Virus record (IMG/VR): IMGVR_UViG_3300050120_000361
Coordinates: 1-64,000 of that record
Length of the DNA: 64,000 nt
Direction: 5' to 3' (one strand)
Shown: one piece after another, positions 497 to 17,906 of the stretch
Layout of the letters: every line of letters starts with the position of its first letter
Position numbering within the stretch: position 1 is the stretch's first letter
Program-made: the position numbers and the translations under genes
The notes under the pieces: generated by a model
What the model saw: the letters and a program-made list of their open reading frames with translations, nothing else
Told to the model about the DNA's origin: nothing
Databases searched by the model: none

Positions 497-1160
497 CGCT
501 CGTTTCCCCCTTTCTGTGTATTGGGTGCTCAGGGTCGAATATCGGCTTCCACCACGCGAGCGGCATGCACTCGTTGGCCCATTTGAGCGCCGCCTTGTGG
601 GTGTTGCGCTCCCACATAGAAATCAGAAGGTTCGGGCAGTCATTGCGGCTGTCCCATTGGATGCTGTAGGCCGTGCGCGGGTCCTCGCCCTTCTGCTTGT
701 TCGCAAGCTCGGCCTCTATTTCTGTTATGGCGAGCCTCACGACAGCGGCGCACATGTCCTCGAAAAGCCCGCAAGCGTAAAGCCTTGCCTCGAGTTCCAT
801 ACGCACCGTTCTGCGCTGTTTGAGGATTGGATCCTTCTGTTCCGCACCGTCGCTGAAATGCGTCACCTTATCGAAGCCCTTGCAGGTCTCGTAGGCCTTG
901 ACGCATTCCTCAGCGGTTACGTAGTCTCCGAGCATTTCCATAACCCTTGAGCCTTCGCCGTCCCTGTGCGTCCACCTCGACAGGCCGAATGGCTTGTCCT
1001 CGTAAAGCGCGACGGACACCATGTAGGTTCCATCGATGTCAACTCCGGCGTCCGTCAGGTTGCCCTCGTCGAGCGGCGTAACCTCATTGGGGATTACCCC
1101 AATCTGCCAGAGCAGCCTCGCCACCCTGACCTCGTTCTTTAGTTCGTCTTCTATAAACAT
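486..1160 (-). CDS. hypothetical protein
   Basis: 224 aa ORF, A-rich leader, typical codon usage. Confidence 0.8.
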   Translation of the reverse strand: MFIEDELKNEVRVARLLWQIGVIPNEVTPLDEGNLTDAGVDIDGTYMVSVALYEDKPFGLSRWTHRDGEGSRVMEMLGDYVTAEECVKAYETCKGFDKVTHFSDGAEQKDPILKQRRTVRMELEARLYACGLFEDMCAAVVRLAITEIEAELANKQKGEDPRTAYSIQWDSRNDCPNLLISMWERNTHKAALKWANECMPLAWWKPIFDPEHPIHRKGETSDEQ

Positions 1161-1167
1161 GATTTTT

Positions 1168-1212
1168 GTTTCTTACCAATTAAAGCTCCACATCAATGAT
1201 GTGGAGCTTGTT
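1168..1212 (-). promoter_or_regulatory. cassette hairpin + linker
   Basis: AAGCTCCACATC/GATGTGGAGCTT stem then sense TAATTGGTAAGAAAC. Confidence 0.7.
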
Positions 1213-1222
1213 TCCATGCCTG

Positions 1223-1432
1223 TCAGGCGGACACGTACTCGGCGCTCTTTGCGGGGTCGCCGTAGAAGACTACCTGGTTCTTCAGGGAGTCCACTATCTG
1301 GACCACCTCATAGCCCACGCACGGAAGGGCCGCGAGCCCGGCGTCGACGGCCTTGTCGTGGCTGCTGTGGAAGTCCCCGAAGCCGCCCATAGGCTCTCCA
1401 GGGTTGAACTTGAATACCCAAAACCTTTTCAT
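1223..1432 (-). CDS. hypothetical protein
   Basis: 69 aa, ATGA-coupled to upstream gene. Confidence 0.75.
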   Translation of the reverse strand: MKRFWVFKFNPGEPMGGFGDFHSSHDKAVDAGLAALPCVGYEVVQIVDSLKNQVVFYGDPAKSAEYVSA

Positions 1433-1827
1433 AATTTCTTTTCGTTTATTGTTACAAGTCTACCAAGATTAACTCCTTTGTTAAGGTCTGCTGTCATGCC
1501 ACTCGTTACTGTGGTGTTACGCATTACCATTGCAACGCCGTATCTTTCAATTTCCTTGTAGTTAGCAATTCCAAAAAGTAGTACAGCAGTTGTCTTATCA
1601 GCGGCTTTGTCATAAGCTTCGCCAAAAGCCTTACAGAGCTTGGCGAGCTGTTCATCCACTTTGTCGCGAATGTGCGGTTTTGCGTACTTATTAAGCAGAA
1701 GCCATTCCTTGATTTTCCTGCTCTTATCGTCCTTGTTTAGCTCTTCCTTGAACTTTTCCTGGGCTTTATCCCAGTTAGCATCGGAAACCTTATGCTCCCT
1801 TCCGCTTATCAATATAATGTGGCTCAT
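1429..1827 (-). CDS. hypothetical protein
   Basis: 132 aa, ATGA overlaps both sides. Confidence 0.75.
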   Translation of the reverse strand: MSHIILISGREHKVSDANWDKAQEKFKEELNKDDKSRKIKEWLLLNKYAKPHIRDKVDEQLAKLCKAFGEAYDKAADKTTAVLLFGIANYKEIERYGVAMVMRNTTVTSGMTADLNKGVNLGRLVTINEKKL

Positions 1828-3221: not shown

Positions 3222-4001
3222 TCAATCGTTATGGGCAATCCTCTCGATTTCGGGGTACTCGTTAGCCGTTATCCTGATAACCACGTCCCCGCACATGACA
3301 ATGAAGTGGGTGCCCTTGCGCACCAGCTCGAGCTCCGTGGTCTGCTTGAGCTTCATAAGCTTGGCTACCCTGATGCCGTCGTAGTACGCGAAGGACGCCA
3401 TGTGGCTCTCGCCGTCGTCCTCGTACAGCCAGACGTCGATTGTCTTTGGCTTCGTCTCCTTCAGCTCGTTGCGCTCGTCCAGTGCTGTTATGGTCGTTCC
3501 GAGCATGATGTTGAGGTCCGTGAGGGTGTTCCTGAAGTCACCGCTCGGAACGGCGTTTATCCATCGCTCGAGCCTTTCGCCGAATGCCCTGAGGGTTTCA
3601 ATTCCTATGTCCGTGCGCTCGGCGTCGCTTCTTACCTTGTCGGCGATGCGCTTCACGTCCGCGTCCCTGAACCTTACGAACCACTCCATTGCGTCCTCAA
3701 GGTACTTCTTCCTGTCGGACAGTTTTACGAAGTGGTAGGCGTCCAGAGTCACCTTGTCACCCAAGTTGGCCTTTATCTTATCCGATATTAGCATGAAGCC
3801 GTTTATCGCTGATACGTCCACCTTCACGTGCATTACGCCCTTTTCATCGAGTTCTCCCCAGTCCCACATCACGAGCATCCTGTCGAGGATTGTGTCGTGG
3901 TGTATAACCATTTCGGAGTTCTCATTAAGCCACCGGCACATTTCGCCGGTGTTGGAGAGCACCAGCTTGAGCTGGTGCTCTGTAGGTCTTTTGAGTTCCA
4001 T
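3222..4001 (-). CDS. hypothetical protein
   Basis: 259 aa ORF. Confidence 0.8.
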   Translation of the reverse strand: MELKRPTEHQLKLVLSNTGEMCRWLNENSEMVIHHDTILDRMLVMWDWGELDEKGVMHVKVDVSAINGFMLISDKIKANLGDKVTLDAYHFVKLSDRKKYLEDAMEWFVRFRDADVKRIADKVRSDAERTDIGIETLRAFGERLERWINAVPSGDFRNTLTDLNIMLGTTITALDERNELKETKPKTIDVWLYEDDGESHMASFAYYDGIRVAKLMKLKQTTELELVRKGTHFIVMCGDVVIRITANEYPEIERIAHND

Positions 4002-4011
4002 ATACTTGTTT

Positions 4012-4058
4012 TCGTTTTACACCAATTCAAGCCCGCACGGAGACGTGCGGGCTTTTAA
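4012..4058 (-). promoter_or_regulatory. cassette hairpin + linker
   Basis: AAGCCCGCACG/CGTGCGGGCTT stem then sense TGAATTGGTGTAAAACG. Confidence 0.7.
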
Positions 4059-4059
4059 A

Positions 4060-4488
4060 TTAGATTGTGTGCTGTTCCGTGAAGTCCTCAACGGCCTGCC
4101 ACACGGCCAGCGCGATTGACTCGGCCAGGTAGCCGCTCTCCACGTATTCCAAATTCTTTGGGTTGTCGACTCCCCAACTCCTTCCAAAGCCGGCGTAGCT
4201 TATGAAGTGCTCGCCTGGGGCTGTTGGGTGGTGCTCGAAGTTCACGTGGCATTCGGCGCTCACTGCTGGGACGCTTTTCCAGCAGTTCAGCTCGTATTCG
4301 GAGCCAGCGGTCTTGTTGCCCTTCACGAACATAATGAACTTTCTTGGATTGTCGCTTCCAATTGTGAACTCGAACGGTTTGGCGAACTTTCCCGATTTCC
4401 GGAGCTCTTCCACAGCTCCCTTGGCCGTCTTGGAGACATAGGCTATAAGCTTTTCCGCATCCTGTTTGGTTTTTTCTGCTTTGTCCAT
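4060..4488 (-). CDS. hypothetical protein
   Basis: 142 aa; start ATG 4488 after cassette leader. Confidence 0.75.
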   Translation of the reverse strand: MDKAEKTKQDAEKLIAYVSKTAKGAVEELRKSGKFAKPFEFTIGSDNPRKFIMFVKGNKTAGSEYELNCWKSVPAVSAECHVNFEHHPTAPGEHFISYAGFGRSWGVDNPKNLEYVESGYLAESIALAVWQAVEDFTEQHTI

Positions 4489-4495
4489 AAGTGTT

Positions 4496-4541
4496 GTTTC
4501 TTTAACCGTCAAAGGCCCATCGGTTAACCGATGGGCCTTTT
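4496..4541 (-). promoter_or_regulatory. cassette hairpin + linker
   Basis: near-perfect palindrome AAAGGCCCATCGGTTAACCGATGGGCCTTT then sense GACGGTTAAAGAAAC. Confidence 0.7.
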
Positions 4542-4543
4542 TA

Positions 4544-4786
4544 TTACCTTTCCCTGAATTTCACGTACTTATCGAGATGCACTCCTTTTGAAAGGTCCGA
4601 TATGAATTTTGTGGGTATTCCCGAAAGTTTGACAATCTTGGGCATCACGCCTATTTCAGACAGCTGCTTGGCATGCCTCAAACCGAACAGTATTACCTGT
4701 ATGGACTGTTCGTGGCGTTGGGCGTTGTTCCATGCGCCGTGGAGCTTCTCCGCAAGCGCCTGAATTTCCAATGGAATTACTTCCAT
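4544..4786 (-). CDS. small HTH-like protein
   Basis: 80 aa; ILFGLRHA...SGIP...KGVHLDKYV resembles a widespread small helical family (from recollection). Confidence 0.5.
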   Translation of the reverse strand: MEVIPLEIQALAEKLHGAWNNAQRHEQSIQVILFGLRHAKQLSEIGVMPKIVKLSGIPTKFISDLSKGVHLDKYVKFRER

Positions 4787-4990: not shown

Positions 4991-5188
4991 TTAGTCTTTG
5001 TATTGTTCGAGTTTCTCCCTGAGCGCCGTGCGCCTCGCAAGGCTCTCAGACAGGGTAATGTTCGCCTTTATGCCGTCTTCTGAGGAAAGGTTTTCCTTCA
5101 TTTGGGCCTTGGTTTTCGTTATCGAAAGTGACAGCACATAGTGCATAAGGTCGATTTCTTCACTTTCCAATGGAATGCTTTTTGTCAT
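4991..5188 (-). CDS. hypothetical protein
   Basis: 65 aa ORF. Confidence 0.7.
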   Translation of the reverse strand: MTKSIPLESEEIDLMHYVLSLSITKTKAQMKENLSSEDGIKANITLSESLARRTALREKLEQYKD

Positions 5189-5199
5189 GATTTTTAGTG

Positions 5200-5250
5200 T
5201 TTCGTTTCTTACCTATTAATGCCCGATACACTTGCGCGTACCAGGCCTAC
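5200..5250 (-). promoter_or_regulatory. cassette hairpin + linker (degenerate)
   Basis: sense TTAATAGGTAAGAAAC after imperfect GC stem. Confidence 0.5.
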
Positions 5251-5254
5251 CTCA

Positions 5255-5650
5255 TTAATAGGTCCGTTTGTGGTTTTCCTTGAGGTATGCTATGACCTCT
5301 TCGAAAGTGCCTATCAGGACGGGCATTTTGCGTAGGTTGTTCACGTCGCATGCGGAACTGTCTCCCGTATATGTTCCGATATAAACCTCAAAGCCTTTCG
5401 CGTATACGCAAATCTGTCCCTCATTTCCGCCAAGAGACACGTCTATTGAGTGTTCGGAAGTTCTTCCGACATCCTCGAAACCCTCATCGTAGAACTTTTT
5501 GCGAAGCTCATCCGTGAATTTTTTCGAAGCACCTGTGAGCTTTTCTATATTCTCTTTGGTATCGTATTGCGGATAGTATTCCCATGCGCGTCTTTCCTGC
5601 ATGCGGTTCCATCCATTTTCTCGACTTTCGTCAAATGGCACTACTTTCAT
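5255..5650 (-). CDS. hypothetical protein, first gene of cassette array
   Basis: 131 aa; ATG 5650 lies just downstream of promoter motif. Confidence 0.75.
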   Translation of the reverse strand: MKVVPFDESRENGWNRMQERRAWEYYPQYDTKENIEKLTGASKKFTDELRKKFYDEGFEDVGRTSEHSIDVSLGGNEGQICVYAKGFEVYIGTYTGDSSACDVNNLRKMPVLIGTFEEVIAYLKENHKRTY

Positions 5651-5677
5651 GATTTGTCTTGTTTTCTTATATTGTAC

Positions 5678-5705
5678 ATATCCCATAAACGTCCGTATTA
5701 TAGGG
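5678..5705 (-). promoter_or_regulatory. phage promoter-like motif
   Basis: CCCTATAA-N13-GGGATAT. Confidence 0.75.
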
Positions 5706-5737
5706 CATTCGTTACGTTTCGACAAGCGTCCGCCCAA

Positions 5738-6023
5738 GCGCACCGGTGCAACGGGCCTTTTTGACGGCACGCCTTGGCAAATGGCTTGGAATATCCCGAA
5801 AGTACCGTATTATTGCGTATTTTCCGGTGCGCCGGGTTGTTGCTCCCCATGGCTCGGGTGCGTCGAATTGAATGCCCGTAATGTATGGGTTTCAGTGGGA
5901 TATGCCATGTTTTGGGAACCTTTCAATTGTGCGCACCGGATATGGAGGCCATTCGGCCGTTATCCTTGGCAAATGCCTTTGCGGTTTTGTGGGAACCCCT
6001 TATTGTGGCATTGTCCGGTGCGC
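5738..6023. repeat. five-site inverted-repeat module A
   Basis: GCGCACCGG 5738, CCGGTGCGC 5824, CGGGTGCGT 5855, GCGCACCGG 5931, CCGGTGCGC 6015 (spacing 86/31/76/84). Confidence 0.9.
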
Positions 6024-6074
6024 ATTGGCGGAACGGGCAATAGAAAAGTCCCAATTGGGACTTGAATGCGAATG

Positions 6075-6227
6075 CTATTTAACTGTCAAATGGAACACCG
6101 CCCTGCAAACCTCCTTGATATGGAACATGTCATGCTCGTGCAAATCAATGGACAAATAGCCGAATGTTAGGGAAACGATGATTTCGAAAAGGGATTTAGT
6201 TGTTTGTTTCTTGATTAGTTTCTGCAT
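6075..6227 (-). CDS. hypothetical protein (50 aa, MQKLIKKQTT...)
   Basis: read by hand; has its own promoter motif at 6277-6303. Confidence 0.6.
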   Translation of the reverse strand: MQKLIKKQTTKSLFEIIVSLTFGYLSIDLHEHDMFHIKEVCRAVFHLTVK

Positions 6228-6276
6228 GACGTTTGGGTTTTAGTTTATGATAAATGATTGTTTTCTTATATCATTT

Positions 6277-6303
6277 ATATCCTGAAACTCCAAACATTAT
6301 AAG
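6277..6303 (-). promoter_or_regulatory. phage promoter-like motif
   Basis: CTTATAA-N13-AGGATAT. Confidence 0.7.
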
Positions 6304-6354
6304 ATAATCGAGCATTATCCGCAATATATGCCCAATACCTTATTGCACAACTGC

Positions 6355-6448
6355 GCGCACCGGATACGGGACCAAAACAGGGGCTGTCCTTGACTAATGC
6401 CTTGCCAAACAGTTTGGCCTGCATTCTGACGATAAGTTTCCGGTGCGC
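6355..6448. repeat. single 94-bp inverted-repeat unit
   Basis: GCGCACCGG 6355, CCGGTGCGC 6440 (spacing 85); central AATGCCTTGCCAAAC. Confidence 0.9.
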
Positions 6449-6468
6449 ATGCGGCCTATGGGCAAAAT

Positions 6469-6501
6469 AAAAGGGTCACCGAACTCGCTTCGGGACCCTT
6501 T
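6469..6501 (-). terminator. intrinsic terminator of 126-aa gene
   Basis: AAAGGGTC...GACCCTTT stem with sense-strand U tract. Confidence 0.65.
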
Positions 6502-6545
6502 CAACCTAAACCTTATCACAATCTGCGGCGGTTGCCGCATTCTCT

Positions 6546-6926
6546 TTATGCTACGACCAATTCGGCTTTTGCGGCTTTGGCTTTCGCCTTTGAAGCGCGG
6601 CTTGCCTTGTTGCGGGCCAAACGTGCTTTCTTTTCTTCAGGAGTTTCAACTTTTGCAACTGTTTCGATAACTTCAACCTTGTGGGTTACGGGAACGATTT
6701 TCGCAAGCATTGCGTCCTTAACGCTGTTGGTTGCGGCTTCGATGAACAGGCCCTTGAAAACAGGCAGTTCGATAACGTCTTCTGAACCAGCTTCGATACG
6801 GTCAGCGATTTCGAATGCAACGTCTTTTTTGATGCTCAAACGTTTTGCGGTTGCAACTACGAAGTTTAATTTTGCGCCGAATGATTTAGTTGAATACAAT
6901 GCGGCTGATTTGAATGATGCTTTCAT
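6546..6926 (-). CDS. small protein with Lys/Ala-rich C-terminal tail (putative DNA-binding)
   Basis: 126 aa; tail KKARLARNKASRASKAKAKAAKA; monocistronic. Confidence 0.7.
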   Translation of the reverse strand: MKASFKSAALYSTKSFGAKLNFVVATAKRLSIKKDVAFEIADRIEAGSEDVIELPVFKGLFIEAATNSVKDAMLAKIVPVTHKVEVIETVAKVETPEEKKARLARNKASRASKAKAKAAKAELVVA

Positions 6927-6979
6927 GATTTTAATTTTTTAAGTTTGTTTAAATAATTTGTTTGTTTCTTATGATAATT

Positions 6980-7007
6980 ATATCCTGAAAACCCAAACAA
7001 TATAGGG
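6980..7007 (-). promoter_or_regulatory. phage promoter-like motif
   Basis: CCCTATAT-N13-AGGATAT. Confidence 0.75.
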
Positions 7008-7041
7008 AATACGGGAAAATAGTTCATATAGTTATGCTTAC

Positions 7042-7329
7042 GCGCACCGGTACATCATGAATTATTGGTTGTATGCAGGGCATTTGGCAACCAATCCCGA
7101 ATACATGGCCTTTTCTGTTCCCAATACCGGTGCGTACGGTTGCGTACCAATAAGGTACTGGTGCGCGCGGTTGTATCGATTATTCAATGGGAATATCGGG
7201 CATTGCATGGCAAACGGAAACCAATTGCGTTCCATGCGCACCAGACAGTCATTGAATATCTGCCATTGACAAGGCATTATGCCTGATGGTTCCAATACGG
7301 TCCCAATACGGTCAACAGTGCCGGTGCGC
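7042..7329. repeat. five-site inverted-repeat module B
   Basis: sites at 7042(R), 7127(L), 7158(L), 7236(R), 7321(L); spacing 85/31/78/85. Confidence 0.9.
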
Positions 7330-7347
7330 GCGAACGGCCGTATACAG

Positions 7348-7372
7348 AAAAAGCCCGACTTTCGTCGGGCTT
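7348..7372 (-). terminator. intrinsic terminator of 253-aa gene
   Basis: AAGCCCGAC-TTTC-GTCGGGCTT with sense-strand U tract. Confidence 0.75.
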
Positions 7373-7403
7373 AATCTTCATTAGTCAGTTAATTGTTTCT
7401 TTA

Positions 7404-8165
7404 TTACAACGCCTCGATTGCAACGGTTTGCTTAACCGAAAGAGGGATAAGGTATGCCTTCAATGAAGCGTTGCCGTCATTGGCATCCTTGAATTTGATT
7501 TTGGCCTCTTCGAAAGCCGCAACGGGAACGTCGTATATTTCGCCGTCGATTTGCAGCGGTTTTGTAACGACTTTGGTAGATAGCGGTTTGCGGGGTTTGT
7601 AGTAGGTTTTGGCGTAGCGTATACGGTCAATACCTGTTTGCATTTCGGCGATGATGTCAACCTCTTTGGCAAGTTCAACTTGCATGTAGACATCGGCAGC
7701 GTAGCCCTTAGCAGCGGCCTCGTCGTCAATCATTTTCTTGATTGCTGTACGGGCGGGCTTAACTTCCCACCATGAAGACAACAGCAACAGGAGAGGATTG
7801 ATTGATTGGCCTGCAATCTGAATGGTTGAGATAACCTTCAAACCGTCCAAAATCTTAGGCTCGCGCTCTTTGTCGTATTTGGACGATGCAACGGTCTCGT
7901 TGATATAGTCCAATGGGCTGTGAGCTTCCAACCATTCGCGGTCCGTGAACTGCGGAGTGTTTTCATCAACAACGTGCATTGACAAATTGCCTTGCGCGGC
8001 GTCTTCCAGGTCATTTCCAAGCTCGGGGTCAGCGGCGCCAGCGTTTGGCTGTTCGTTCTGAGCTCCTTCGTTTTGCTCGTTTTGTGCGCCTTCTTTGTTG
8101 GCTGCTACTGATTGGTTTTGTTGTGCTTTAGCGGCTTTTTCAGCGGCTCTGTTTTTGTTTGACAT
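7404..8165 (-). CDS. early paralogue-family protein (253 aa), acidic/disordered N-terminus
   Basis: C-terminal half aligns with 11584-12150 and 12210-12524. Confidence 0.8.
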   Translation of the reverse strand: MSNKNRAAEKAAKAQQNQSVAANKEGAQNEQNEGAQNEQPNAGAADPELGNDLEDAAQGNLSMHVVDENTPQFTDREWLEAHSPLDYINETVASSKYDKEREPKILDGLKVISTIQIAGQSINPLLLLLSSWWEVKPARTAIKKMIDDEAAAKGYAADVYMQVELAKEVDIIAEMQTGIDRIRYAKTYYKPRKPLSTKVVTKPLQIDGEIYDVPVAAFEEAKIKFKDANDGNASLKAYLIPLSVKQTVAIEAL

Positions 8166-8206
8166 GACTTTAATTTTTGGATTGATTAATTTGTTTCTTA
8201 TTTACT

Positions 8207-8235
8207 GTATCCCAAAAATGATGGAATTATAAGGG
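8207..8235 (-). promoter_or_regulatory. phage promoter-like motif
   Basis: CCCTTATAA-N13-GGGATAC. Confidence 0.7.
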
Positions 8236-8299
8236 ATTTGGAAAGTTTTTTCGTTTTGTTTTCGTTTAGATGTTCAAATCCTCATCGCTTATATTATAT

Positions 8300-8326
8300 A
8301 TATCCCAAAAAACGTTATTATATAGG
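8300..8326 (-). promoter_or_regulatory. phage promoter-like motif (tandem with 8207)
   Basis: CCTATAT-N13-GGGATAT. Confidence 0.75.
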
Positions 8327-8369
8327 AATATCGGAAACTTTGTGCTAATAGGCAGTTATGGACAGTCGC

Positions 8370-8657
8370 GCGCACCGGTTATTCGGCATATTTTAAGGTT
8401 GTGCAAGGCATTTATCCTCATGGCTTTCCTACACGGCATTCAATAAATAGTGTTCCGGTGCGCTTGGATGTTATAGTCTTTGCGGGCCGGTGCGCCGGGT
8501 TGAGCCTCCAAAACTGAAAAAGCCCCTGTTTCCCAAGCATTTTTGGCATACCGACAGCATCTATGCGCACCGGATATTATCCGATAATCCAGAAACCGTT
8601 GGCATTCATCAGGGCTTTAACAGTATTCGGAGGCTTCCGCAGGATTGTCCGGTGCGC
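8370..8657. repeat. five-site inverted-repeat module C
   Basis: sites at 8370(R), 8455(L), 8487(L), 8565(R), 8649(L); spacing 85/32/78/84. Confidence 0.9.
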
Positions 8658-8670
8658 ACAGCACAACAAA

Positions 8671-8699
8671 CCCTATAAGTATTGGCGTCCAACGGATAT
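8671..8699 (+). promoter_or_regulatory. phage promoter-like motif
   Basis: CCCTATAA-N14-CGGATAT, 13 bp from module C. Confidence 0.7.
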
Positions 8700-8722
8700 A
8701 ATTTCTGTTAAAACTTACGAAC

Positions 8723-8947
8723 ATGCAACAGCACACAACCTCAGAACTAATCGACCATTTGGCCCATATCATATATGATTTGGGATGGCCCATAGTAATA
8801 CCAATAATCATACTCGCTCTGGTGCTGATGGCTCTGGTGCGCGTACTGAGATTGATATTCAAAATCCCTATATTAACATGGATTTTCGGATATATAATAT
8901 ACAAGAGAACATCAAACAAAGACAAACAACCAAAATGGAAACAATAA
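8723..8947 (+). CDS. small membrane protein
   Basis: 74 aa, long hydrophobic stretch then basic tail. Confidence 0.65.
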   Translation: MQQHTTSELIDHLAHIIYDLGWPIVIPIIILALVLMALVRVLRLIFKIPILTWIFGYIIYKRTSNKDKQPKWKQ

Positions 8948-9180
8948 CCAAAATCGTAGACGGTCTGAAAGGCCAGCCAATCTACATACAAGCAGCAGCA
9001 ATCCTTTTCGCATTAGCGTTGGGACTTTTCATCGGATTGCTGCCAAAAGTGATACTCGTTGACATCATGGGATTGCCGTTCAATCCACCAAAACTGAAAT
9101 TCTTAGGGGCCAACAGAGCCCCTAAAATTTTGCCTGTTCGGAGCGTGCGCACCAGCGCACGCTCCCAGAGCATCGTGTAA
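8935..9180 (+). CDS. small membrane protein
   Basis: 81 aa from ATG 8935; one or two hydrophobic segments. Confidence 0.6.
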   Translation: METITKIVDGLKGQPIYIQAAAILFALALGLFIGLLPKVILVDIMGLPFNPPKLKFLGANRAPKILPVRSVRTSARSQSIV

Positions 9181-9238
9181 TTAAATTGCCTTGGCAAACG
9201 CCCGCAAATACGGCAATAATTGGAAATGCCCGGTGCGC
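9147..9238. repeat. single 92-bp inverted-repeat unit
   Basis: GCGCACCAG 9147, CCGGTGCGC 9230; central TTGCCTTGGCAAAC; left arm inside hairpin GAGCGTGCGC/GCGCACGCTC. Confidence 0.85.
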
Positions 9239-9253
9239 GTGAATGTCTTAAAT

Positions 9254-9281
9254 CCCTATCTTTTCGGCTTGCATGGGATAT
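9254..9281 (+). promoter_or_regulatory. phage promoter-like motif
   Basis: CCCTATCT-N13-GGGATAT. Confidence 0.7.
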
Positions 9282-9306
9282 AGGAAACTAAGAAACATAC
9301 AATAAC

Positions 9307-9582
9307 ATGGAAGACAACACGAAAACAGACAGCACCGAGCAAAAAGCTCAGGTGGAAATTGGGCCAATGCCCACGCTGCACGAGGACATGGTGCTCACTT
9401 GGCAGGAGGCCGACATGCTCGCCGCTTTCAGGCTGATGGGACTTACCCCAGAAACGGTGGTAGTCCTCATAAGGGGCACGATTGACATACTGTCAATAAG
9501 GACGGGCGGAACGGAGCAAATCAGGCTTCTTACCCAAAAGGAGAACCTCAGCTCACTGTTGAACCTTTTAACGGTAAAATAA
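9307..9582 (+). CDS. hypothetical protein
   Basis: 91 aa, follows promoter. Confidence 0.75.
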   Translation: MEDNTKTDSTEQKAQVEIGPMPTLHEDMVLTWQEADMLAAFRLMGLTPETVVVLIRGTIDILSIRTGGTEQIRLLTQKENLSSLLNLLTVK

Positions 9583-9998
9583 TGGAAAAGGTAAGAATAT
9601 CAAAGCACAAGACCCTCGGCTACATTGAAGTACAATTCGAGTTCGATGAGGAGAACGCCACGGGCAAGGAGGCCATAGTAAGGGGCATATCACAGCCTGG
9701 AAGCTACACCGTGAAGCAGAAGGACTACAAATCCTCTGAAATTGAGGTTGACTGCTGGGACGGGGTGTATGAAAAGGGCGTTGTGGCGCATCTCGCCAAG
9801 GGGCTCCTGCTGCTCGCCGTGGACCCAAATGACGGCATGATTGAGCACCTGCACCTGATGAACGTCAGGGCGATAAGGTGTCCAGCGAAGGGCGAGCGAA
9901 TACTGATTGAGTGGATTAACTACGCGCACATCGAGCAGAACCGCAAGACGTACGCCACGGACATCTGCATAGTCAACGAAACCCTCTGGAATGACTAA
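9582..9998 (+). CDS. hypothetical protein
   Basis: 138 aa, TAATG coupling. Confidence 0.75.
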   Translation: MEKVRISKHKTLGYIEVQFEFDEENATGKEAIVRGISQPGSYTVKQKDYKSSEIEVDCWDGVYEKGVVAHLAKGLLLLAVDPNDGMIEHLHLMNVRAIRCPAKGERILIEWINYAHIEQNRKTYATDICIVNETLWND

Positions 9999-10075
9999 AA
10001 TTGTGAAAATGACGGTAGACGCGATAGTCGTGGTCATACGTACGCTTTAAGACATGTTTTCTTATGTGTTGTCAA

Positions 10076-10120
10076 ATGCCTGCTGGTTAAAATCAGCGGG
10101 CTTTGTCCGTTAAAAAACAA
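10076..10120 (+). promoter_or_regulatory. cassette hairpin + linker
   Basis: GCCTGCTG/CAGCGGGC stem then TTTGTCCGTTAAAAAAC, like the 4496 element. Confidence 0.6.
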
Positions 10121-10129
10121 ACCATTAAA

Positions 10130-10651
10130 ATGAAAAAGACAAGACCATCGCACTTCACGAATTACCCGTGGAGCAGCGTAAAGCAGAAATCCGAATGGGA
10201 GTCGATAGCGCAGAACATCATGAGAGTGATGTCAGAGCACGGCAACGACTTCTCGATAGGCCTCAGCCTGGAACAGTACACCGCCTACAGGGAAAAGGAG
10301 GGCGGTTCGGTGCGCATCTCCCAAGAGAGTTTTGATGAACTTATGGAGTACTGCAAAAGCGCTGAAACGGCTAAGCTGTTCAGTAAGGACTGGAAAGACG
10401 GCGTGCACATGGAAGTATTCGGCAACGACGAAAAGACCTCCAATGAAGACCATAACTCTCGCGAGATAAGCGTTGTAATGACTGTTGGGAACCGCGGGCT
10501 CATTGAAGCCGCCTTGAACCATTACTGGAACGACGCCAACGCCAACCTGCAGCGCAGCGACCTGGGCGACCTTGAGCGCTTTATGTACGAAAAGACCAAG
10601 ACATCCACAAAGGAATTGCTAATGGTTATTGACCTAAACTGGTACCTGTAA
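10130..10651 (+). CDS. hypothetical protein
   Basis: 173 aa from ATG 10130; HFTNYPWSSV motif. Confidence 0.75.
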   Translation: MKKTRPSHFTNYPWSSVKQKSEWESIAQNIMRVMSEHGNDFSIGLSLEQYTAYREKEGGSVRISQESFDELMEYCKSAETAKLFSKDWKDGVHMEVFGNDEKTSNEDHNSREISVVMTVGNRGLIEAALNHYWNDANANLQRSDLGDLERFMYEKTKTSTKELLMVIDLNWYL

Positions 10652-10655
10652 ACAT

Positions 10656-11372
10656 ATGGAACTTTCAAAGAAAGAACAGGACCTGATGCTCAGAGCATTG
10701 GGTTTCCTCCGCAAGGCAATGGCGTGTTCGGAAGAGCAGGAAGACCTGGAAAACGAAAAGGCCCTGGCATCGATGATGGTTTCCGTTAAGGAGGCGCCAA
10801 CCTACGAGAGCACCTCGCGCTACCAGATAGCATCCTTCAAGGAGGACAAGCAACTGATGGTGATGCTCCACAGGGACCTGCTCGCGGCTCTGAAGCCTAT
10901 TGACAGGAAGTACGGCGTTAGGATAACTGGCGGAACGCTCAGGTATGAGGACAAGGGTTTCGGATTGCGCCTGCAGTGCGTGATACCAGCAGGGAGCATG
11001 GAACAGCTCGTAGCGGGGCTCCGCGAGGGCGACCAGTTCAAGCGCAAGGGCACCATATTCACGGTAACATCGATAGACCATCAAACAAAAAAGGTTTCGG
11101 CAATCACCGAGCGCAGGAAGCGGTACCTTGTAAGGTTCGACCAGCTGATGCAGATGATTAAGGTTGAGCGTTTCGCCGGCGGCGCGATGGCCTTTAAGGA
11201 GCTTCAGACATTCGTCAACGTTTCAGAGGCAACCAGGGATGTTGACCAATTGGACTTCGCGAACCTGCCCGTCGGGGACGGAAACGGTGAGATTGTCGTT
11301 GACGAGCCGCTAAAGAAGAAGCTCCTGATTAATGGCAAGCTTTGGAACGTGGACGACATAGAGGTTATCTGA
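10656..11372 (+). CDS. hypothetical protein
   Basis: 238 aa; ends DDIEVI. Confidence 0.8.
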   Translation: MELSKKEQDLMLRALGFLRKAMACSEEQEDLENEKALASMMVSVKEAPTYESTSRYQIASFKEDKQLMVMLHRDLLAALKPIDRKYGVRITGGTLRYEDKGFGLRLQCVIPAGSMEQLVAGLREGDQFKRKGTIFTVTSIDHQTKKVSAITERRKRYLVRFDQLMQMIKVERFAGGAMAFKELQTFVNVSEATRDVDQLDFANLPVGDGNGEIVVDEPLKKKLLINGKLWNVDDIEVI

Positions 11373-11583: not shown

Positions 11584-12150
11584 TTACAATACCTCTACGC
11601 CTTCGTTCTTTTTGGTGTTCGGGTCTGCTAACAATGCAGCGCGTTTCGAAGCTGCGTCCATACCTGACAGTGATGCCAAGAAGTCTGCCGATACTTCGTA
11701 AAGGTCGCCGCTGATGCTTACCTGGATCAGTTTTGTTTTCGCGGTTGTTGCGCGACGGGCGTAGAATGATTTTACGTTGTTCAGCGTTGAAGCCGCTTTC
11801 TGCAAGCCATTGATAACTGCCAATTCTGTTTGGAAGTCGCCGTCGATGTAATTTTTGAACTCTTCCGAACCGCCGAAGCTTTCGATAACCGAAGCCTTAA
11901 CCGGAGCTGAAGCGTCTTTGTCATGCCATACCGGCACCAGGCTCAATACCTTCGCGAAGTTAGCGCTAACGCCGAACTCGTTGATTTTGGCAACTGCAGC
12001 TGTAAGGCCGGCAATTTCTTCAGGGGTTAATTCTTTCGGCTCTTTTGAGCTTTTCTTGGTTTCAGTACCTTCAGCCGGTGCTGTTGAAGTTTCCAAATCG
12101 GAAACGTTTAATTCCTGGTCTTCAGCAGGAGATTGTGCGTCGTTTGACAT
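11584..12150 (-). CDS. early paralogue-family protein (188 aa)
   Basis: aligns with 7404-8165. Confidence 0.8.
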   Translation of the reverse strand: MSNDAQSPAEDQELNVSDLETSTAPAEGTETKKSSKEPKELTPEEIAGLTAAVAKINEFGVSANFAKVLSLVPVWHDKDASAPVKASVIESFGGSEEFKNYIDGDFQTELAVINGLQKAASTLNNVKSFYARRATTAKTKLIQVSISGDLYEVSADFLASLSGMDAASKRAALLADPNTKKNEGVEVL

Positions 12151-12209: not shown

Positions 12210-12524
12210 CTATATCTCAAGGACTGGTGGGGCCGAGGCTATTATCTCATCGATGAGCTTTTGCTTGCTCTTCTCCGACTTCATCTCCTTCAGCCTCTCG
12301 TACATCACCAGGCTTATCGTGTAGTGTCTGCCCTTGAGGGTGACGGCTATGCTTCCTGTTGGCGTGCGTGGCTTCTTAGCCTTTTCCTCTTTGACTCGAG
12401 CAGTCTGTTCGGCAAGTTTTTGTTCGAGCTCGTTGAACTGGTCTATGTCGAGGTTGTTCCAATCAACCTGTGAAAAGTCGATTATTTCGGTTTCCTTTTG
12501 ACCTTGCGCATTTACGTTGCTCAT
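12210..12524 (-). CDS. early paralogue-family protein (104 aa)
   Basis: shares the C-terminal V-x-I/L-x-G-x2-Y module. Confidence 0.75.
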   Translation of the reverse strand: MSNVNAQGQKETEIIDFSQVDWNNLDIDQFNELEQKLAEQTARVKEEKAKKPRTPTGSIAVTLKGRHYTISLVMYERLKEMKSEKSKQKLIDEIIASAPPVLEI

Positions 12525-15953: not shown

Positions 15954-17906
15954 TCAGAGCTTTAGGAATGTCACGCGCTTGGTTATGAAGTCCTGCGTCT
16001 TGAATATGAGCTTCTCCAATGAGGAGTCGAGCAGGTATGTTACAGACCAGTCCTCTACGAAGCGGTTGGTACGGCCAATGGCCTGAACCAGCTTCTCAAG
16101 CGTCTGCCTCTCGTACCAGAAAGCGAACCTGTCCATCTTCTTTTTTGTGTATTCCGTCAGGCCTGAGTAAGGCGCCTTGACCACGATGTTGAAGCGCCCC
16201 ATGTCACCAGAAAGGTCGAGGCCCTCGTACAGGGACGGCCCTACGATGACGTACGGCGGAGAAGACAGGTCCTTCATCCTGCGCACAGCCTCCTCCTTCT
16301 CGGCGGAGTTCGTGTAGAACAGGTACCTGTGCGGGTGGGTTACGGCGCCGGCCCGGTACACGGCCTCCTTGAGCTTTTCAGCTATCTGGAATGTTGACGT
16401 GTGTATGATGCCCTTCTCCTTTGGGTGCCTCTTCTCAGCAACCTTAATGGCGTCCAGGAGGACTGAGTGTATGTTCTCATTGAACTTAGAGTAGTTGAGG
16501 TAGCCTGACTTGGTCAGGTATATCGGCGACTTGTCGAAGTTGAAGTTGGACGCGAGCCTGAAGCCGGAGTACTCCTCCTTCTTCATGCCCATCAGCAGAG
16601 CGAACTCGTCCACGTTTCCGAGCGTGGCGCTCATGAACACCGCGCGGTCAACCTTTGTCAGGAAGTGCTTCCTGCACATCTCGGCCTCGTTCATGTCGTA
16701 CACGGTGTGCCTGAAAGTCTTGTACGAGCCGCCCTCGATTATGCTGTTCGTCACGAACTCGCTTTCTATGAAAAGGTCGTCAGGCCTAAGCGCGAGCTCG
16801 TCCAGGTACTTGATGTCAGGCATGCCCTTCATCTCCTCCACGATCTTCTTCACCTCCTTGTCGAACATCTGCTTGAAGGTCTCGTTCTTGGCCTTCATCT
16901 CCGTGTTCAGCGCTGCGAGCCACTTGACCAGGAGCAGGTAGTTGTCAACGTGCTCGCGTATGTCGTCCAGCGTGGGCCTGTCCATACTGAACAGCTTGAA
17001 GGCGGCCATCAGGGGCTCCCTGCCCTCCTTGAGCATCGCGCCGGCCGCGTTCTTGAAGTTTATCTCGACCTGCTGGAATATCTTGTATATCCTGTTCATG
17101 CCCCACTGCGTGAGGGCCAGGTTGAAGTGGCTGAGCACTATGTCAGGAACCAGGTGGGCCTCATCGCATATCGTTAGCGGCCTGATGCCGAAGTACGGGT
17201 TCTGCTTCATCTTCATTATGTTGATGAAGTACGCGTAGTTAAGCACGGCGCAGCCGGCCTCCGAGGTCTGGAACCTCTTCTGTATGTACGGGCACGTGTC
17301 GTAGCAGCCGAGCGCCATTATGTCTGGGCGCTTCATTCCCAGACAGTACCTGTCAGGGTACTTCACTGGAACCTTCTCCTCCTCGGTCAGGAGCGTGCAA
17401 AGGTAGTTGGACGTGCCCTTAAGCATTGAGAACCAGCGGTGCATGTCGAACTTGTCGAAGTCCTGCTCGAGCTGTTCCTGCAGGGCCTTGGAACTCGTCA
17501 GGAAGTAGGAGTGCCCGCTGAAGTTCCGCAGGTATGCTCCCTCGCCGTCTATGGGGTCAACGCCCTCCATCACCCAGTCAAGGTAGGCCGTGCAGTAGTG
17601 TATCATGTCGCCTATTATCGACTTGCCCGTGCCGGTGGGTGCCGACAGCAGAACGTAAGGCTTCTTCTCAATGTAGAGCGACTTCAGCACGCTGTAGAGA
17701 GTTATTATGAGGGTCTCATCCTTCCTGAAGAGCGGGTTGAAGTTGAGGCATGTACCCAATGCGACCCTGATATGGCTGTCCATTTCAGCCGCGTTCGGGA
17801 ACAGCACCTGTTCGTGCTGGCTTGGCTCCTCCTCAGGAGCTGGGATTATAGCTGTCTCTCCAAGGGGGTCTTCATCGTCCCAGTCAAGGTCTCCGTATTC
17901 AATCAT
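15954..17906 (-). CDS. dinG: DinG/XPD-family ATP-dependent DNA helicase
   Basis: SAPTGTGKS, DEAH, four-Cys Fe-S region, GIIHT, QAIGR. Confidence 0.9.
   Translation of the reverse strand: MIEYGDLDWDDEDPLGETAIIPAPEEEPSQHEQVLFPNAAEMDSHIRVALGTCLNFNPLFRKDETLIITLYSVLKSLYIEKKPYVLLSAPTGTGKSIIGDMIHYCTAYLDWVMEGVDPIDGEGAYLRNFSGHSYFLTSSKALQEQLEQDFDKFDMHRWFSMLKGTSNYLCTLLTEEEKVPVKYPDRYCLGMKRPDIMALGCYDTCPYIQKRFQTSEAGCAVLNYAYFINIMKMKQNPYFGIRPLTICDEAHLVPDIVLSHFNLALTQWGMNRIYKIFQQVEINFKNAAGAMLKEGREPLMAAFKLFSMDRPTLDDIREHVDNYLLLVKWLAALNTEMKAKNETFKQMFDKEVKKIVEEMKGMPDIKYLDELALRPDDLFIESEFVTNSIIEGGSYKTFRHTVYDMNEAEMCRKHFLTKVDRAVFMSATLGNVDEFALLMGMKKEEYSGFRLASNFNFDKSPIYLTKSGYLNYSKFNENIHSVLLDAIKVAEKRHPKEKGIIHTSTFQIAEKLKEAVYRAGAVTHPHRYLFYTNSAEKEEAVRRMKDLSSPPYVIVGPSLYEGLDLSGDMGRFNIVVKAPYSGLTEYTKKKMDRFAFWYERQTLEKLVQAIGRTNRFVEDWSVTYLLDSSLEKLIFKTQDFITKRVTFLKL

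What the first reader, a model, noticed from the sequence alone, without database searches (positions are those of the whole stretch)
5678..9281. Every inverted-repeat element sits directly upstream of a promoter motif
Seen: module A ends 32 bp from promoter 5678-5705; the 6355 unit is 51 bp from 6277-6303; module B is 34 bp from 6980-7007; module C lies between divergent promoters (43 bp from 8300-8326 and 13 bp from 8671-8699); the 9147 unit is 15 bp from 9254-9281. The 6355 unit and module B lie between a terminator and a promoter, so they are probably not transcribed, and the nine promoter motifs further right (12579-60457) have no such element. Inference: two promoter classes exist, and the repeat-linked class is specially activated or silenced, for example by a virion-delivered factor acting before phage protein synthesis.
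Basis: partly seen in the sequence, partly recalled or inferred. Interest (0 to 1): 0.72.

Follow-up and report, generated by a model that had tools for sequence, protein, structure and literature searches.

The report
Repeat modules flanking phage early promoters
A 208-kb uncultivated peat jumbo phage, and at least seven distant relatives, place precisely built ~93-bp "arm–palindrome–arm" DNA units between the terminator of one small early gene and the promoter of the next. They are most likely protein-binding control modules of a kind not yet described; what they do is inferred, not shown.

Summary
All 14 exact copies of GCGCACCGG/CCGGTGCGC in the 208,538-bp genome lie in 5738-9238. The promoter motif (CCTATAA-N14-GGGATAT, 20-55 nt before start codons) gives 16 strong hits genome-wide against 0 in a control.

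The same architecture recurs in seven metagenomic relatives (GC 22-45%). These have 59 units; 42 of them are 91-92 bp from core to core. The arm core is CGCACCRG (CACACCWG throughout one phage). A central palindrome sits about 5 bp off-centre. The promoter motif is shared, and a syntenic 253-aa early protein with no recognisable fold is always present.

There is no covariation and no unit-specific stem, so these are DNA sites, not RNA. In 40 of 68 promoters an arm ends 15-52 bp upstream (median 33.5).

Best reading: looped nucleoprotein modules that control or insulate early promoters. Several relatives carry units or a lone arm at convergent junctions with no promoter. No evidence points to a virion-delivered factor. 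Rivals are an origin/enhancer hybrid, recombination linkers and an injection-stop signal.

The parts
5738..6023 (.). Module A. Unit A1 5738-5832, degenerate orphan arm 5855-5863, unit A2 5931-6023. Central palindromes at 5775-5784 and 5967-5976.
6355..6448 (.). Single unit S1: arms 6355-6363 and 6440-6448, centre about 6391-6400.
7042..7329 (.). Module B. Unit B1 7042-7135, orphan arm 7158-7166, unit B2 7236-7329. Same arm spacing as modules A and C (85, 31, 78, 85 bp).
8370..8657 (.). Module C, between divergent promoters. Unit C1 8370-8463, orphan arm 8487-8495, unit C2 8565-8657.
9147..9238 (.). Single unit S2, in the opposite polarity: its centre 9193-9202 is displaced toward the + strand promoter. 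The left arm has 1 mismatch and overlaps the end of ORF 8935-9180.
5678..5705 (-). Promoter-like motif P1 (CCTATAAT-N13-GGGATAT), 27 nt before the ATG at 5650. Followed by the leader box ATAAGAAAAC.
6277..6303 (-). Promoter-like motif P2, before gene 6227-6075.
6980..7007 (-). Promoter-like motif P3, before gene 6926-6546.
8206..8326 (-). Tandem promoter-like motifs (8299-8326 and 8206-8233) before the conserved 253-aa gene. The tandem arrangement is seen in six of the seven relatives (L090, L091, L092, L093, L113, L116) but not in L089/G001, which has a single motif.
8671..8700 (+). Promoter-like motif P5, before gene 8723-8947.
8867..8894 (+). Promoter-like motif inside ORF 8723-8947, 41 nt before the ATG at 8935. 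No unit directly upstream.
9254..9282 (+). Promoter-like motif P6, before gene 9307-9582.
7351..7372 (-). Intrinsic-terminator hairpin after the 253-aa gene, 21 bp from the distal arm of module B.
6470..6501 (-). Hairpin followed by a T run (on the minus strand) after gene 6926-6546. Seen by eye; missed by the scan.
6046..6063 (-). Terminator hairpin after gene 6227-6075.
9103..9125 (+). Terminator-like hairpin just before unit S2.
7404..8165 (-). Conserved 253-aa early protein: disordered acidic N-terminus, confident C-terminal domain with no fold match. A homolog lies next to the units in all eight phages. Candidate binder; not shown.

Best explanation
The units are double-stranded-DNA binding modules for sequence-specific protein(s). 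They form the upstream control region of the phage's early promoters.

Anatomy of a unit. Two inverted copies of a ~12-bp arm (core CGCACCRG) lie about 85 bp apart start to start, roughly 8 helical turns. They flank a ~16-bp palindrome (CTTGRCA-WW-TGYCAAG) displaced about 5 bp from the midpoint. Units stand alone or in composites (arm-85-arm-31-arm-78-arm-85-arm). They fill the space between the terminator of one small gene and the promoter of the next. The proximal arm ends about 34 bp before the first promoter block, which places it near -70 if GGATAT is the -10 element.

Inferred mechanism. A dimer on the palindrome bends the DNA so that the two arms, which lie on the same helical face, are held together by an arm-binding factor. 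This gives a compact looped particle next to RNA polymerase. The particle would boost the early promoters at the start of infection, or shut them off once the binder accumulates, and would insulate each cassette from its neighbour. The binder is probably phage-encoded. The only gene linked to the units in all eight phages is the 253-aa early protein.

Shown: the anatomy, its conservation, the linkage to promoters and to that gene, and the absence of RNA-type covariation. Inferred: protein binding, looping, the direction of regulation and the identity of the binder.
For: Clustering and fixed geometry in the window.

The same system occurs in seven relatives that differ greatly in base composition (GC 22-45%, against ~46% in this region and ~52% genome-wide). 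These are L089/G001, L090-L093 and L113/L116, the last two found by DNA pattern alone.

59 units are 89-94 bp core to core, 42 of them 91-92 bp. A second peak at 123-124 bp reflects an orphan arm 31 bp further on.

Arms are GC-rich islands kept even in 22%-GC genomes. In L092 all copies read CACACC instead of CGCACC.

Only the arms, the centre and the spacing are conserved; the interiors diverge.

There are no compensatory changes. Flank complementarity within a unit is no higher than between units: 4.4 vs 6.3, 6.5 vs 6.1, 6.0 vs 7.2, 10.6 vs 9.9 and 10.7 vs 9.6 matches of 16.

40 of 68 promoter motifs have an arm ending 15-52 bp upstream. The centre is displaced toward the promoter in roughly 18 of 23 promoter-proximal units (my tally).

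A 253-aa homolog is adjacent to the units in 8 of 8 phages.
Against: There is no experimental or transcript evidence; no RNA run was listed. No binder is identified. The 253-aa protein has no recognisable DNA-binding fold, and its dimer test gave no answer. HTH_73 proteins in the early block are absent from the G001 fragment.

Units or arms without an adjacent promoter exist at convergent junctions in L089, L091, L092 and L116. The gap to the promoter varies from 13 to 52 bp. Adjacency is partly forced, because the units fill short intergenic spacers. The concerted arm change in L092 would also preserve base pairing.
Confidence: 0.5

Rival explanations
1. Origin of replication, or a dual enhancer/origin comparable to baculovirus homologous regions. 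The arms would be initiator binding sites spread through the early region beside the replication module, and the adjacent promoters would provide transcriptional activation.
For: Repeated oriented sites on one helical face (spacings of 85 and 31 bp). The units occur only once per genome, next to the replication gene block (helicase 15954-17906, ligase and others). A conserved unknown protein is always adjacent. Some units lack promoters.
Against: There is no AT-rich unwinding element; region GC is about 46% against 52% genome-wide. The detrended GC skew shows only the local dip expected from divergent transcription. Units are interleaved with five or more genes over 3.5 kb rather than forming one compact origin. 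The 253-aa protein shows no likeness to a known initiator.
Confidence: 0.15
2. Recombination linkers, as with PeSL cassettes of T4-type phages. The repeats would persist mainly because they give homology for shuffling, duplicating and exchanging small ORFan cassettes, with no protein-binding role of their own.
For: The region is hyperplastic. Only a few local genes are shared even with the closest relative L093, and they sit in a different order and on different sides of the divergence point. L093 has two paralogs of the 126-aa gene, each with its own units and a near-identical promoter and leader. A diverged co-occurring strain carries an equal-length replacement of module B. PeSLs are ~100-bp promoter/terminator composites flanking ORFans (PMC2839356, PMC4122927).
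Against: Homology-driven linkers should be conserved along their length. Here the interiors diverge freely while 8-12-bp arms, a palindrome and a spacing of +/-1-2 bp are held across phages whose helicases are about 43% identical. That pattern indicates site-specific recognition.
Confidence: 0.1
3. DNA-entry or domain-boundary signal, comparable to the repeat-rich injection-stop region of T5 (recalled from memory). Protein bound at the units would pause genome ejection or delimit the first-expressed domain.
For: Units or arms mark the convergent boundary of the early block in L089, L091, L092 and L116. The region consists of small early-type genes.
Against: The genome's termini and packaging mode are unknown. 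The record is a circular assembly with a 127-bp overlap, so nothing shows that this region enters the cell first. Most units are internal and promoter-linked.
Confidence: 0.07
4. Structured RNA or single-stranded-DNA elements: a long-range 9-bp stem closing a central hairpin, acting on read-through transcripts or on replication intermediates.
For: Arms and centre are self-complementary. Unit folding z-scores are -1.3 to -3.2. The L092 arm change keeps pairing.
Against: RNAalifold finds only the invariant terminal stem, with no compensatory pair. Variable arm and palindrome positions do not covary, and stems do not extend in a unit-specific way. There is no Rfam or tRNA match. The units lie after terminators and before promoters.
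Confidence: 0.05
5. Selfish miniature inverted-repeat elements (MITE-like) that multiplied locally.
For: Short terminal inverted repeats, ~93 bp long, in multiple copies.
Against: Copies are confined to one syntenic region in every genome and absent from the other 205 kb. Interiors are not alike. There are no target-site duplications. Positions and polarity are conserved across very distant relatives. No bacterial genome shows clustered copies.
Confidence: 0.03

Closest known systems
PeSLs (promoter-early stem-loop cassettes) of T4-type phages (PMC2839356, PMC4122927)
   Same: Repeated composite regulatory cassettes of about 100 bp in hyperplastic regions. They combine a terminator hairpin and a strong early promoter, flank small ORFan genes, and are linked to duplication and shuffling of those genes. 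This phage also has a T4-like late sigma and a T4-like terminase.
   Different: As described in those papers, PeSLs consist of an AT-rich region, a sigma-70-like promoter, a stem-loop and a Shine-Dalgarno site. They include no separate arm-palindrome-arm unit with fixed 8-turn spacing. Here an extra element of 93 to 290 bp sits between terminator and promoter and is conserved as sites, not as sequence homology. The promoter is not sigma-70-like.
Baculovirus homologous regions (hrs). Comparison from my own knowledge; PMC6669502 and PMC3989284 turned up in the literature search but were not read.
   Same: Dispersed clusters of imperfect palindromic repeats in intergenic DNA of a large virus. They enhance neighbouring early promoters through a dimeric early protein and are also candidate origins.
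   Different: A eukaryotic virus with different repeat anatomy and no sequence relation. Neither the enhancer role nor the origin role is tested here.
Phage phi29 p4/p6 switch region (PMC3100819)
   Same: Inverted-repeat binding sites between divergent early and late promoters. Phage early proteins bend the DNA into a hairpin-like nucleoprotein complex that activates and represses promoters.
   Different: phi29 has one region of about 220 bp with four p4 sites. Here there are 5 or more loci per genome, different site geometry, and no p4 or p6 homologs detected.
E. coli BIME/RIP elements (inverted REP pair around an IHF site). From my own knowledge.
   Same: Extragenic units of about 100 bp placed after terminators, made of two inverted repeats around a central site for a DNA-bending protein.
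   Different: REP arms are ~35-bp palindromes scattered around a bacterial chromosome. Here the arms are 8-12-bp non-palindromic sites, confined to one phage region and coupled to promoters.
KorB/OB operator network of IncP plasmids. From my own knowledge.
   Same: One recognition sequence repeated upstream of many promoters at variable distances, giving coordinated control of a set of establishment genes.
   Different: OB is a single 13-bp palindrome bound by a ParB-family protein. No ParB-like protein or comparable site was found here.

Membership tests
PeSL regulatory cassettes | Conserved composite of an early promoter plus a stem-loop terminator in intergenic spaces of a hyperplastic region flanking ORFans | tested here: met
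   The order terminator - (units) - promoter - small ORFan repeats 5 times. Local proteins have no family matches.
PeSL regulatory cassettes | The promoter is sigma-70-like (host -35/-10) | tested here: not met
   The conserved blocks CCTATA and GGATAT do not match TTGACA/TATAAT. The Bacteroidota-type TAnnTTTG is also absent upstream of genes.
PeSL regulatory cassettes | The cassette is essentially promoter plus stem-loop, with no additional large repeat | tested here: not met
   Arm-palindrome-arm units of 93 to 290 bp lie between terminator and promoter.
Structured RNA family | Conserved secondary structure supported by compensatory changes, or a match to a curated family | tested here: not met
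   No Rfam hit. Only an invariant terminal stem with 0 compensatory pairs. No unit-specific stem extension.
MITE / transposon-derived repeats | Terminal inverted repeats with target-site duplications, similar interiors and scattered insertion sites | tested here: not met
   Inverted repeats are present, but there are no duplications, the interiors diverge, and all copies lie in one syntenic 3.5-kb region.
Integron attC cassette sites | Imperfect inverted repeat with RYYYAAC / GTTRRRY cores at cassette boundaries, plus an integrase | tested here: not met
   Arm cores are CGCACCRG, not the attC consensus (consensus recalled from memory). No integrase turned up among the roughly 45 ORFs scanned against Pfam/PHROGs, but the whole genome was not searched for one.
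Iteron-type replication origin | Clustered initiator sites next to an AT-rich unwinding element and an initiator gene; replication starts there | tested here: inconclusive
   Oriented repeated sites and an adjacent conserved unknown gene are present. No AT-rich element or skew signature was found. Initiation cannot be tested with these tools.
Operator/enhancer array for a transcription factor | A recognition sequence recurring at a constrained position upstream of a promoter set, conserved across relatives | tested here: met
   40 of 68 promoters have an arm ending 15-52 bp upstream, median 33.5 bp. Arms, centre and spacing are conserved in 8 phages.
Operator/enhancer array for a transcription factor | A cognate DNA-binding protein, and an effect on transcription | not testable with these tools
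   Only candidates exist: the 253-aa protein and the HTH_73 proteins. No RNA data were available.

The most novel reading that the evidence does not exclude
The units are a new class of phage enhancer/silencer particle. A previously unseen early protein family (the 253-aa protein, with no recognisable fold) would bind the arms and, with a palindrome-binding dimer, wrap about 93 bp of DNA into a defined loop. This loop would time the host-takeover promoters and possibly also fire replication, making it a bacterial-virus counterpart of baculovirus hr/IE-1 elements. It would be conserved across a whole uncultivated jumbo-phage clade whose early promoters match no known sigma consensus.
Probability: 0.25. 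Interest if true: 0.8.

Novelty: new variant of a known kind. Interest (0 to 1): 0.62.

Why it matters
Very little is known about early gene control in jumbo phages outside a few cultured models. This system offers a compact and strongly conserved cis-architecture: a four-block promoter, a 93-bp two-fold unit, and a linked protein with no recognisable fold. It appears across phages whose GC content ranges from 22% to 52%, so it is under strong selection and can be studied with synthetic DNA and protein without cultivating a host.

If the units are regulatory, they define a new promoter-proximal looping module and a new DNA-binding family. If they also act as origins or recombination linkers, they would help explain how hyperplastic host-takeover regions are organised and reshuffled. 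The arm-centre-arm pattern is also a specific marker for this clade in metagenomes: it recovered two new members and no clustered bacterial copies.

Tried and rejected
- **RNA and tRNA scans:** Rfam and tRNA scans of the window found nothing.
- **Phage DNA similarity:** blastn of 5000-10000 against cultured phages gave no match.
- **GC-rich unit pattern in IMG/VR:** only single, chance-like hits.
- **Local proteins:** PHROGs and Pfam found nothing for the small local proteins, except HTH_73 in two proteins further left.
- **The 253-aa protein:** no relative in IMG/VR by peptide patterns or in cultured phages. No PDB sequence match. No fold match in PDB, BFVD or the wide VIA-align search, best Z 4.3. 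No atlas lead. The homodimer prediction gave no answer and counts neither for nor against.
- **Cultured relatives:** PAU, PTm1, pT24 and MA9V-1 lack the promoter motif beyond chance.
- **Reverse-strand T7-like reading of the motif (...TATAGGG), firing into the repeats:** rejected. Repeat-free copies all lie 25-55 nt upstream of same-strand start codons, and no T7-like polymerase was found (though that family's control rang in no genome).
- **Sigma-70-like or sigma-54-like promoters inside units:** considered because of TTGGCA and TGGCA-N-TTGC resemblances. Rejected because they are not conserved and the spacing is off by one (and inspection).
- **NtrC half-site likeness:** the arm core resembles the NtrC half-site TGCACCA. 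This is recalled from memory and untested.
- **Phage RNA polymerase:** none detected.
- **Sequencing runs:** no RNA run was listed. DNA contigs of three peat runs are identical to the window, so there is no polymorphism to exploit.
- **Bacterial genomes:** 9 hits to the arm-centre-arm pattern, all isolated single units in unrelated taxa, mostly GC-rich, about the number expected by chance.
- **Unavailable DNA:** the 196-kb contig carrying P0004 and the 18-kb contig carrying P0003 could not be fetched.

Full report
**Context**

The window is the first 64 kb of a 208,538-bp IMG/VR virus record. The record is a circular assembly with a 127-bp terminal overlap. Sequencing runs that hold the sequence are peat metagenomes.

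The terminase and a conserved 1060-aa protein are about 26-33% identical to those of phage PAU, Tenacibaculum phages PTm1 and pT24, Chryseobacterium phage MA9V and Lak-type megaphages. This makes it an uncultivated jumbo phage, distantly related to phages of Bacteroidota.

It encodes a helicase, an NAD ligase, an SbcC-like protein, topoisomerase II and a T4 gp55-like late sigma (phrog_234). No RNA polymerase was detected.

Genes run leftward from about 8165 (wrapping round to 206352), rightward from 8723 to 11372, leftward from 106189 to 11584 (replication genes) and rightward from 106419 to 206282 (structural genes). The finding therefore sits at a local divergence point within about 13 kb of small genes that have no family matches.

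**Checking the observation**

The 9-mer GCGCACCGG and its complement occur 14 times exactly in the whole genome, and all 14 lie in 5738-9238. With the 1-mismatch copies they form eight units in which GCGCACCGG is followed 83-86 bp later (start to start) by CCGGTGCGC.

Modules A, B and C share one plan: arm-85-arm-31-arm-78-arm-85-arm. In module A the middle arm is degenerate.

Unit interiors align poorly (mean column identity 60% including the arms). The exception is a central near-palindrome of the type TTGGCAAATGCC, which lies about 5 bp off the unit midpoint.

The promoter-like motif is CCTATAA-N14-GGGATAT. A two-block PWM gives 16 hits at 17 bits or more, against none in the reversed sequence. 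Eight hits lie in 5677-9282 and eight elsewhere, each 25-55 nt upstream of a same-strand ATG.

That placement fixes the motif's direction toward the genes. It also rules out the tempting reverse reading as a T7-like ...TATAGGG promoter firing into the repeats.

Terminator hairpins precede module B, module A and unit 9147. One at 6470-6501 precedes unit 6355. The repeated order is therefore gene - terminator - about 20 bp - unit(s) - 13 to 51 bp - promoter - gene.

**Relatives**

The decisive evidence is comparative.

- A helicase search found a 68-kb IMG/VR fragment (G001, GC 30%, helicase 43% identical). Its equivalent region carries the same system: arms ACGCACCAG / CTGGTGCGT, the same spacing, a central palindrome AAGACATATGTCTT, and the promoter motif CCTATAT-N13-GTGGATAT. 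It also has a 225-aa gene 40% identical to window gene 7404-8165.
- A search with that 253-aa protein returned 25 metagenomic homologs, none with a name or a Pfam domain.
- Four of their contigs could be read (L090-L093; GC 22%, 22%, 22% and 45%). All four carry units and promoter motifs around the gene.
- A pattern search for arm-centre-arm in metagenome contigs recovered two further members, L113 and L116 (GC about 25%). Both also encode the 253-aa homolog beside the units.
- The same pattern in 596 Gb of prokaryote genomes gave only nine isolated hits, about the number expected by chance.
- Cultured relatives lack both the protein and the promoter motif.

**What is conserved**

Across the eight phages there are 59 units. 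Core-to-core length is 89-94 bp, and 42 of 59 are 91-92 bp. A second peak at 123-124 bp reflects the orphan arm 31 bp beyond a unit.

The arm core is CGCACCRG. Some arms in L116 read CGTACC, and all copies in L092 read CACACCWG. The centre follows CTTGRCA-WW-TGYCAAG and lies 4-6 bp off the midpoint in most units.

- an AT-rich upstream box of the type TTTTCCGAAT, mostly in the repeat-linked copies;
- CCTATA (CCCATA in L113 and L116);
- GGATAT, 14 nt further on;
- TATAAGAAAC, about 6 nt after that.

The last box is not promoter-specific. It also precedes genes that have only a hairpin upstream, so it is more likely a leader.

Of 68 promoter motifs in the eight loci, 40 have an arm ending 15-52 bp upstream (median 33.5). 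Twelve more have their nearest arm 83-316 bp upstream; nine of these are the second member of a tandem pair (116-149 bp). The remaining 16 have no arm within 400 bp.

By my tally, the centre is displaced toward the adjacent promoter in about 18 of 23 promoter-proximal units. The exceptions are mostly in modules that serve two divergent promoters.

Several relatives also have units, or a lone arm, between convergent terminators with no promoter nearby. Examples are L089 7950-8334, L091 4965-5053, L092 5069-5178 and the arm at L116 ~4227.

**DNA site or RNA stem?**

RNAalifold finds only the invariant terminal stem, with no compensatory pair.

The one variable arm position and the variable palindrome position do not covary within units. 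Complementarity of arm flanks is no higher within units than between units of the same phage.

Low folding z-scores stem from the arms alone. There is no Rfam or tRNA match.

The units also lie after terminators. Taken together, this pattern fits recognition of double-stranded DNA by proteins. What is conserved is short oriented sites, a palindrome and helical spacing, while the interiors evolve freely. GC-rich arms are kept even in 22%-GC genomes, and the arm changed in concert in one lineage.

**Mechanism (inferred)**

The two arms are about 8 helical turns apart, so they lie on the same face of the helix. The palindrome sits about 3.5 turns from one arm and 4.5 turns from the other.

A bend at the palindrome would bring the arms together, giving a compact loop. 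Its proximal arm would be centred near -70 if GGATAT is the -10 element and CCTATA the -35-like element. That is a classic position for activators or loop-forming repressors.

I therefore rank first the explanation that these are upstream control and insulation modules of the early promoters (confidence 0.5). Whether they activate or silence is open.

The binder is unknown. The 253-aa protein is the only gene linked to the units in all eight phages. It is transcribed from a single or tandem promoter beside a module in every phage. Its conserved C-terminal domain has nine invariant basic residues. However, its confident model (pLDDT 76) matches no known fold, and the dimer test gave no answer.

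**Rivals**

- **Origin or hr-like enhancer/origin (0.15).** Not excluded, but there is no unwinding element or skew signal.
- **PeSL-like recombination linkers (0.10).** This fits the hyperplastic gene content, the duplicated cassette in L093 and the strain-level replacement of module B. It does not explain conservation of sites and spacing without conservation of sequence.
- **Entry or boundary signal (0.07).** Suggested by the units and arms at convergent junctions, but the genome's ends and entry order are unknown.
- **RNA or single-stranded-DNA structure (0.05).** There is no covariation, and the units lie after terminators.
- **MITE-like elements (0.03).** Copies are confined to one syntenic region, and there are no target-site duplications.

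There are two contexts for one promoter motif, and the linkage is conserved and polar. However, the linkage is not universal in relatives, and the core motif does not differ clearly between contexts. Nothing singles out a virion-delivered factor for the linked class. If an unusual factor is needed, it is needed by all promoters of this type, because the motif matches neither the sigma-70 nor the Bacteroidota consensus.

**Novelty**

No paper in the searched library holds the arm sequences in a relevant context, and none describes such units.

The closest described things are:
- PeSL cassettes of T4-type phages (PMC2839356, PMC4122927);
- the phi29 p4/p6 region (PMC3100819);
- from my own knowledge, baculovirus hrs, BIME/RIP elements and KorB operators.

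I file the finding as a new variant of a known kind: promoter-linked repeat and operator cassettes of phage early regions.

Noticed in passing
window 1160-1222, 2117-2192, 2702-2772, 4001-4059, 4488-4543, 5188-5254; also 10000-10130: Downstream genes of the leftward early block lack the promoter motif. Instead each is preceded by a GC-rich hairpin followed by TTTAATTGGTAAGAAACAAA, the same leader box that follows the promoters. This looks like a second, PeSL-like cassette type (terminator or processing site plus leader).
   Followed up: partly
window 8867-8894 (+), inside ORF 8723-8947: A full-scoring promoter motif (23 bits) lies inside a coding region, 41 nt before the ATG at 8935 of the next small membrane-like ORF.
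   Followed up: no
window 11584-12150 (-) and 12210-12524 (-): The 188-aa protein is a weak paralog of the 253-aa protein (25% identity over 132 aa, E 0.007). By eye, the 104-aa protein shares the C-terminal I-x-G-x-x-Y-x-V motif. Both have homologs in the G001 relative.
   Followed up: partly
window 4544-4786 (-) and 1429-1827 (-): Two small early proteins carry the Pfam HTH_73 domain (E 6e-14 and 8e-9). The 196-kb relative contig also has one in the same block, but the G001 fragment has none.
   Followed up: partly
genome 180639-181004 (+), outside the window (L094:1381-1746): A 121-aa ORF matches the T4 gp55-type late sigma factor (phrog_234, E 4.5e-7). The heptamer GATAACA occurs in 13 upstream regions against 0.9 expected, mostly before structural genes and before this ORF. 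It may be the late promoter element.
   Followed up: partly
window 8935-9180 (+): This ORF runs through a terminator-like hairpin (9103-9125) and ends inside the left arm of unit 9147-9238. Either its last ~25 codons overlap regulatory DNA or the ORF is shorter than called.
   Followed up: no
L093 4330-5470: The closest relative has two tandem paralogs of window gene 6546-6926. Each is preceded by two units and a near-identical promoter and leader, which amounts to a duplicated regulatory cassette.
   Followed up: partly
window 6990-7321, in run X1: A low-depth (6x) contig of a diverged co-occurring strain matches the flanking genes at 80-90% identity. It has 317 unalignable bases in place of the 330 bases of module B.
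   Followed up: no
genome ~83050-83160 and ~99350-99440 (outside the window): Upstream regions of two minus-strand genes contain tRNA-like T-arm sequences (GGTTCGAGTCC and GGTTCGAATCC), so the phage probably carries tRNA genes. None lies in the window.
   Followed up: no
L079:888-10010 (genome 124888-134010, +): A 3040-aa ORF in the structural block has no Pfam or PHROG match at all.
   Followed up: partly
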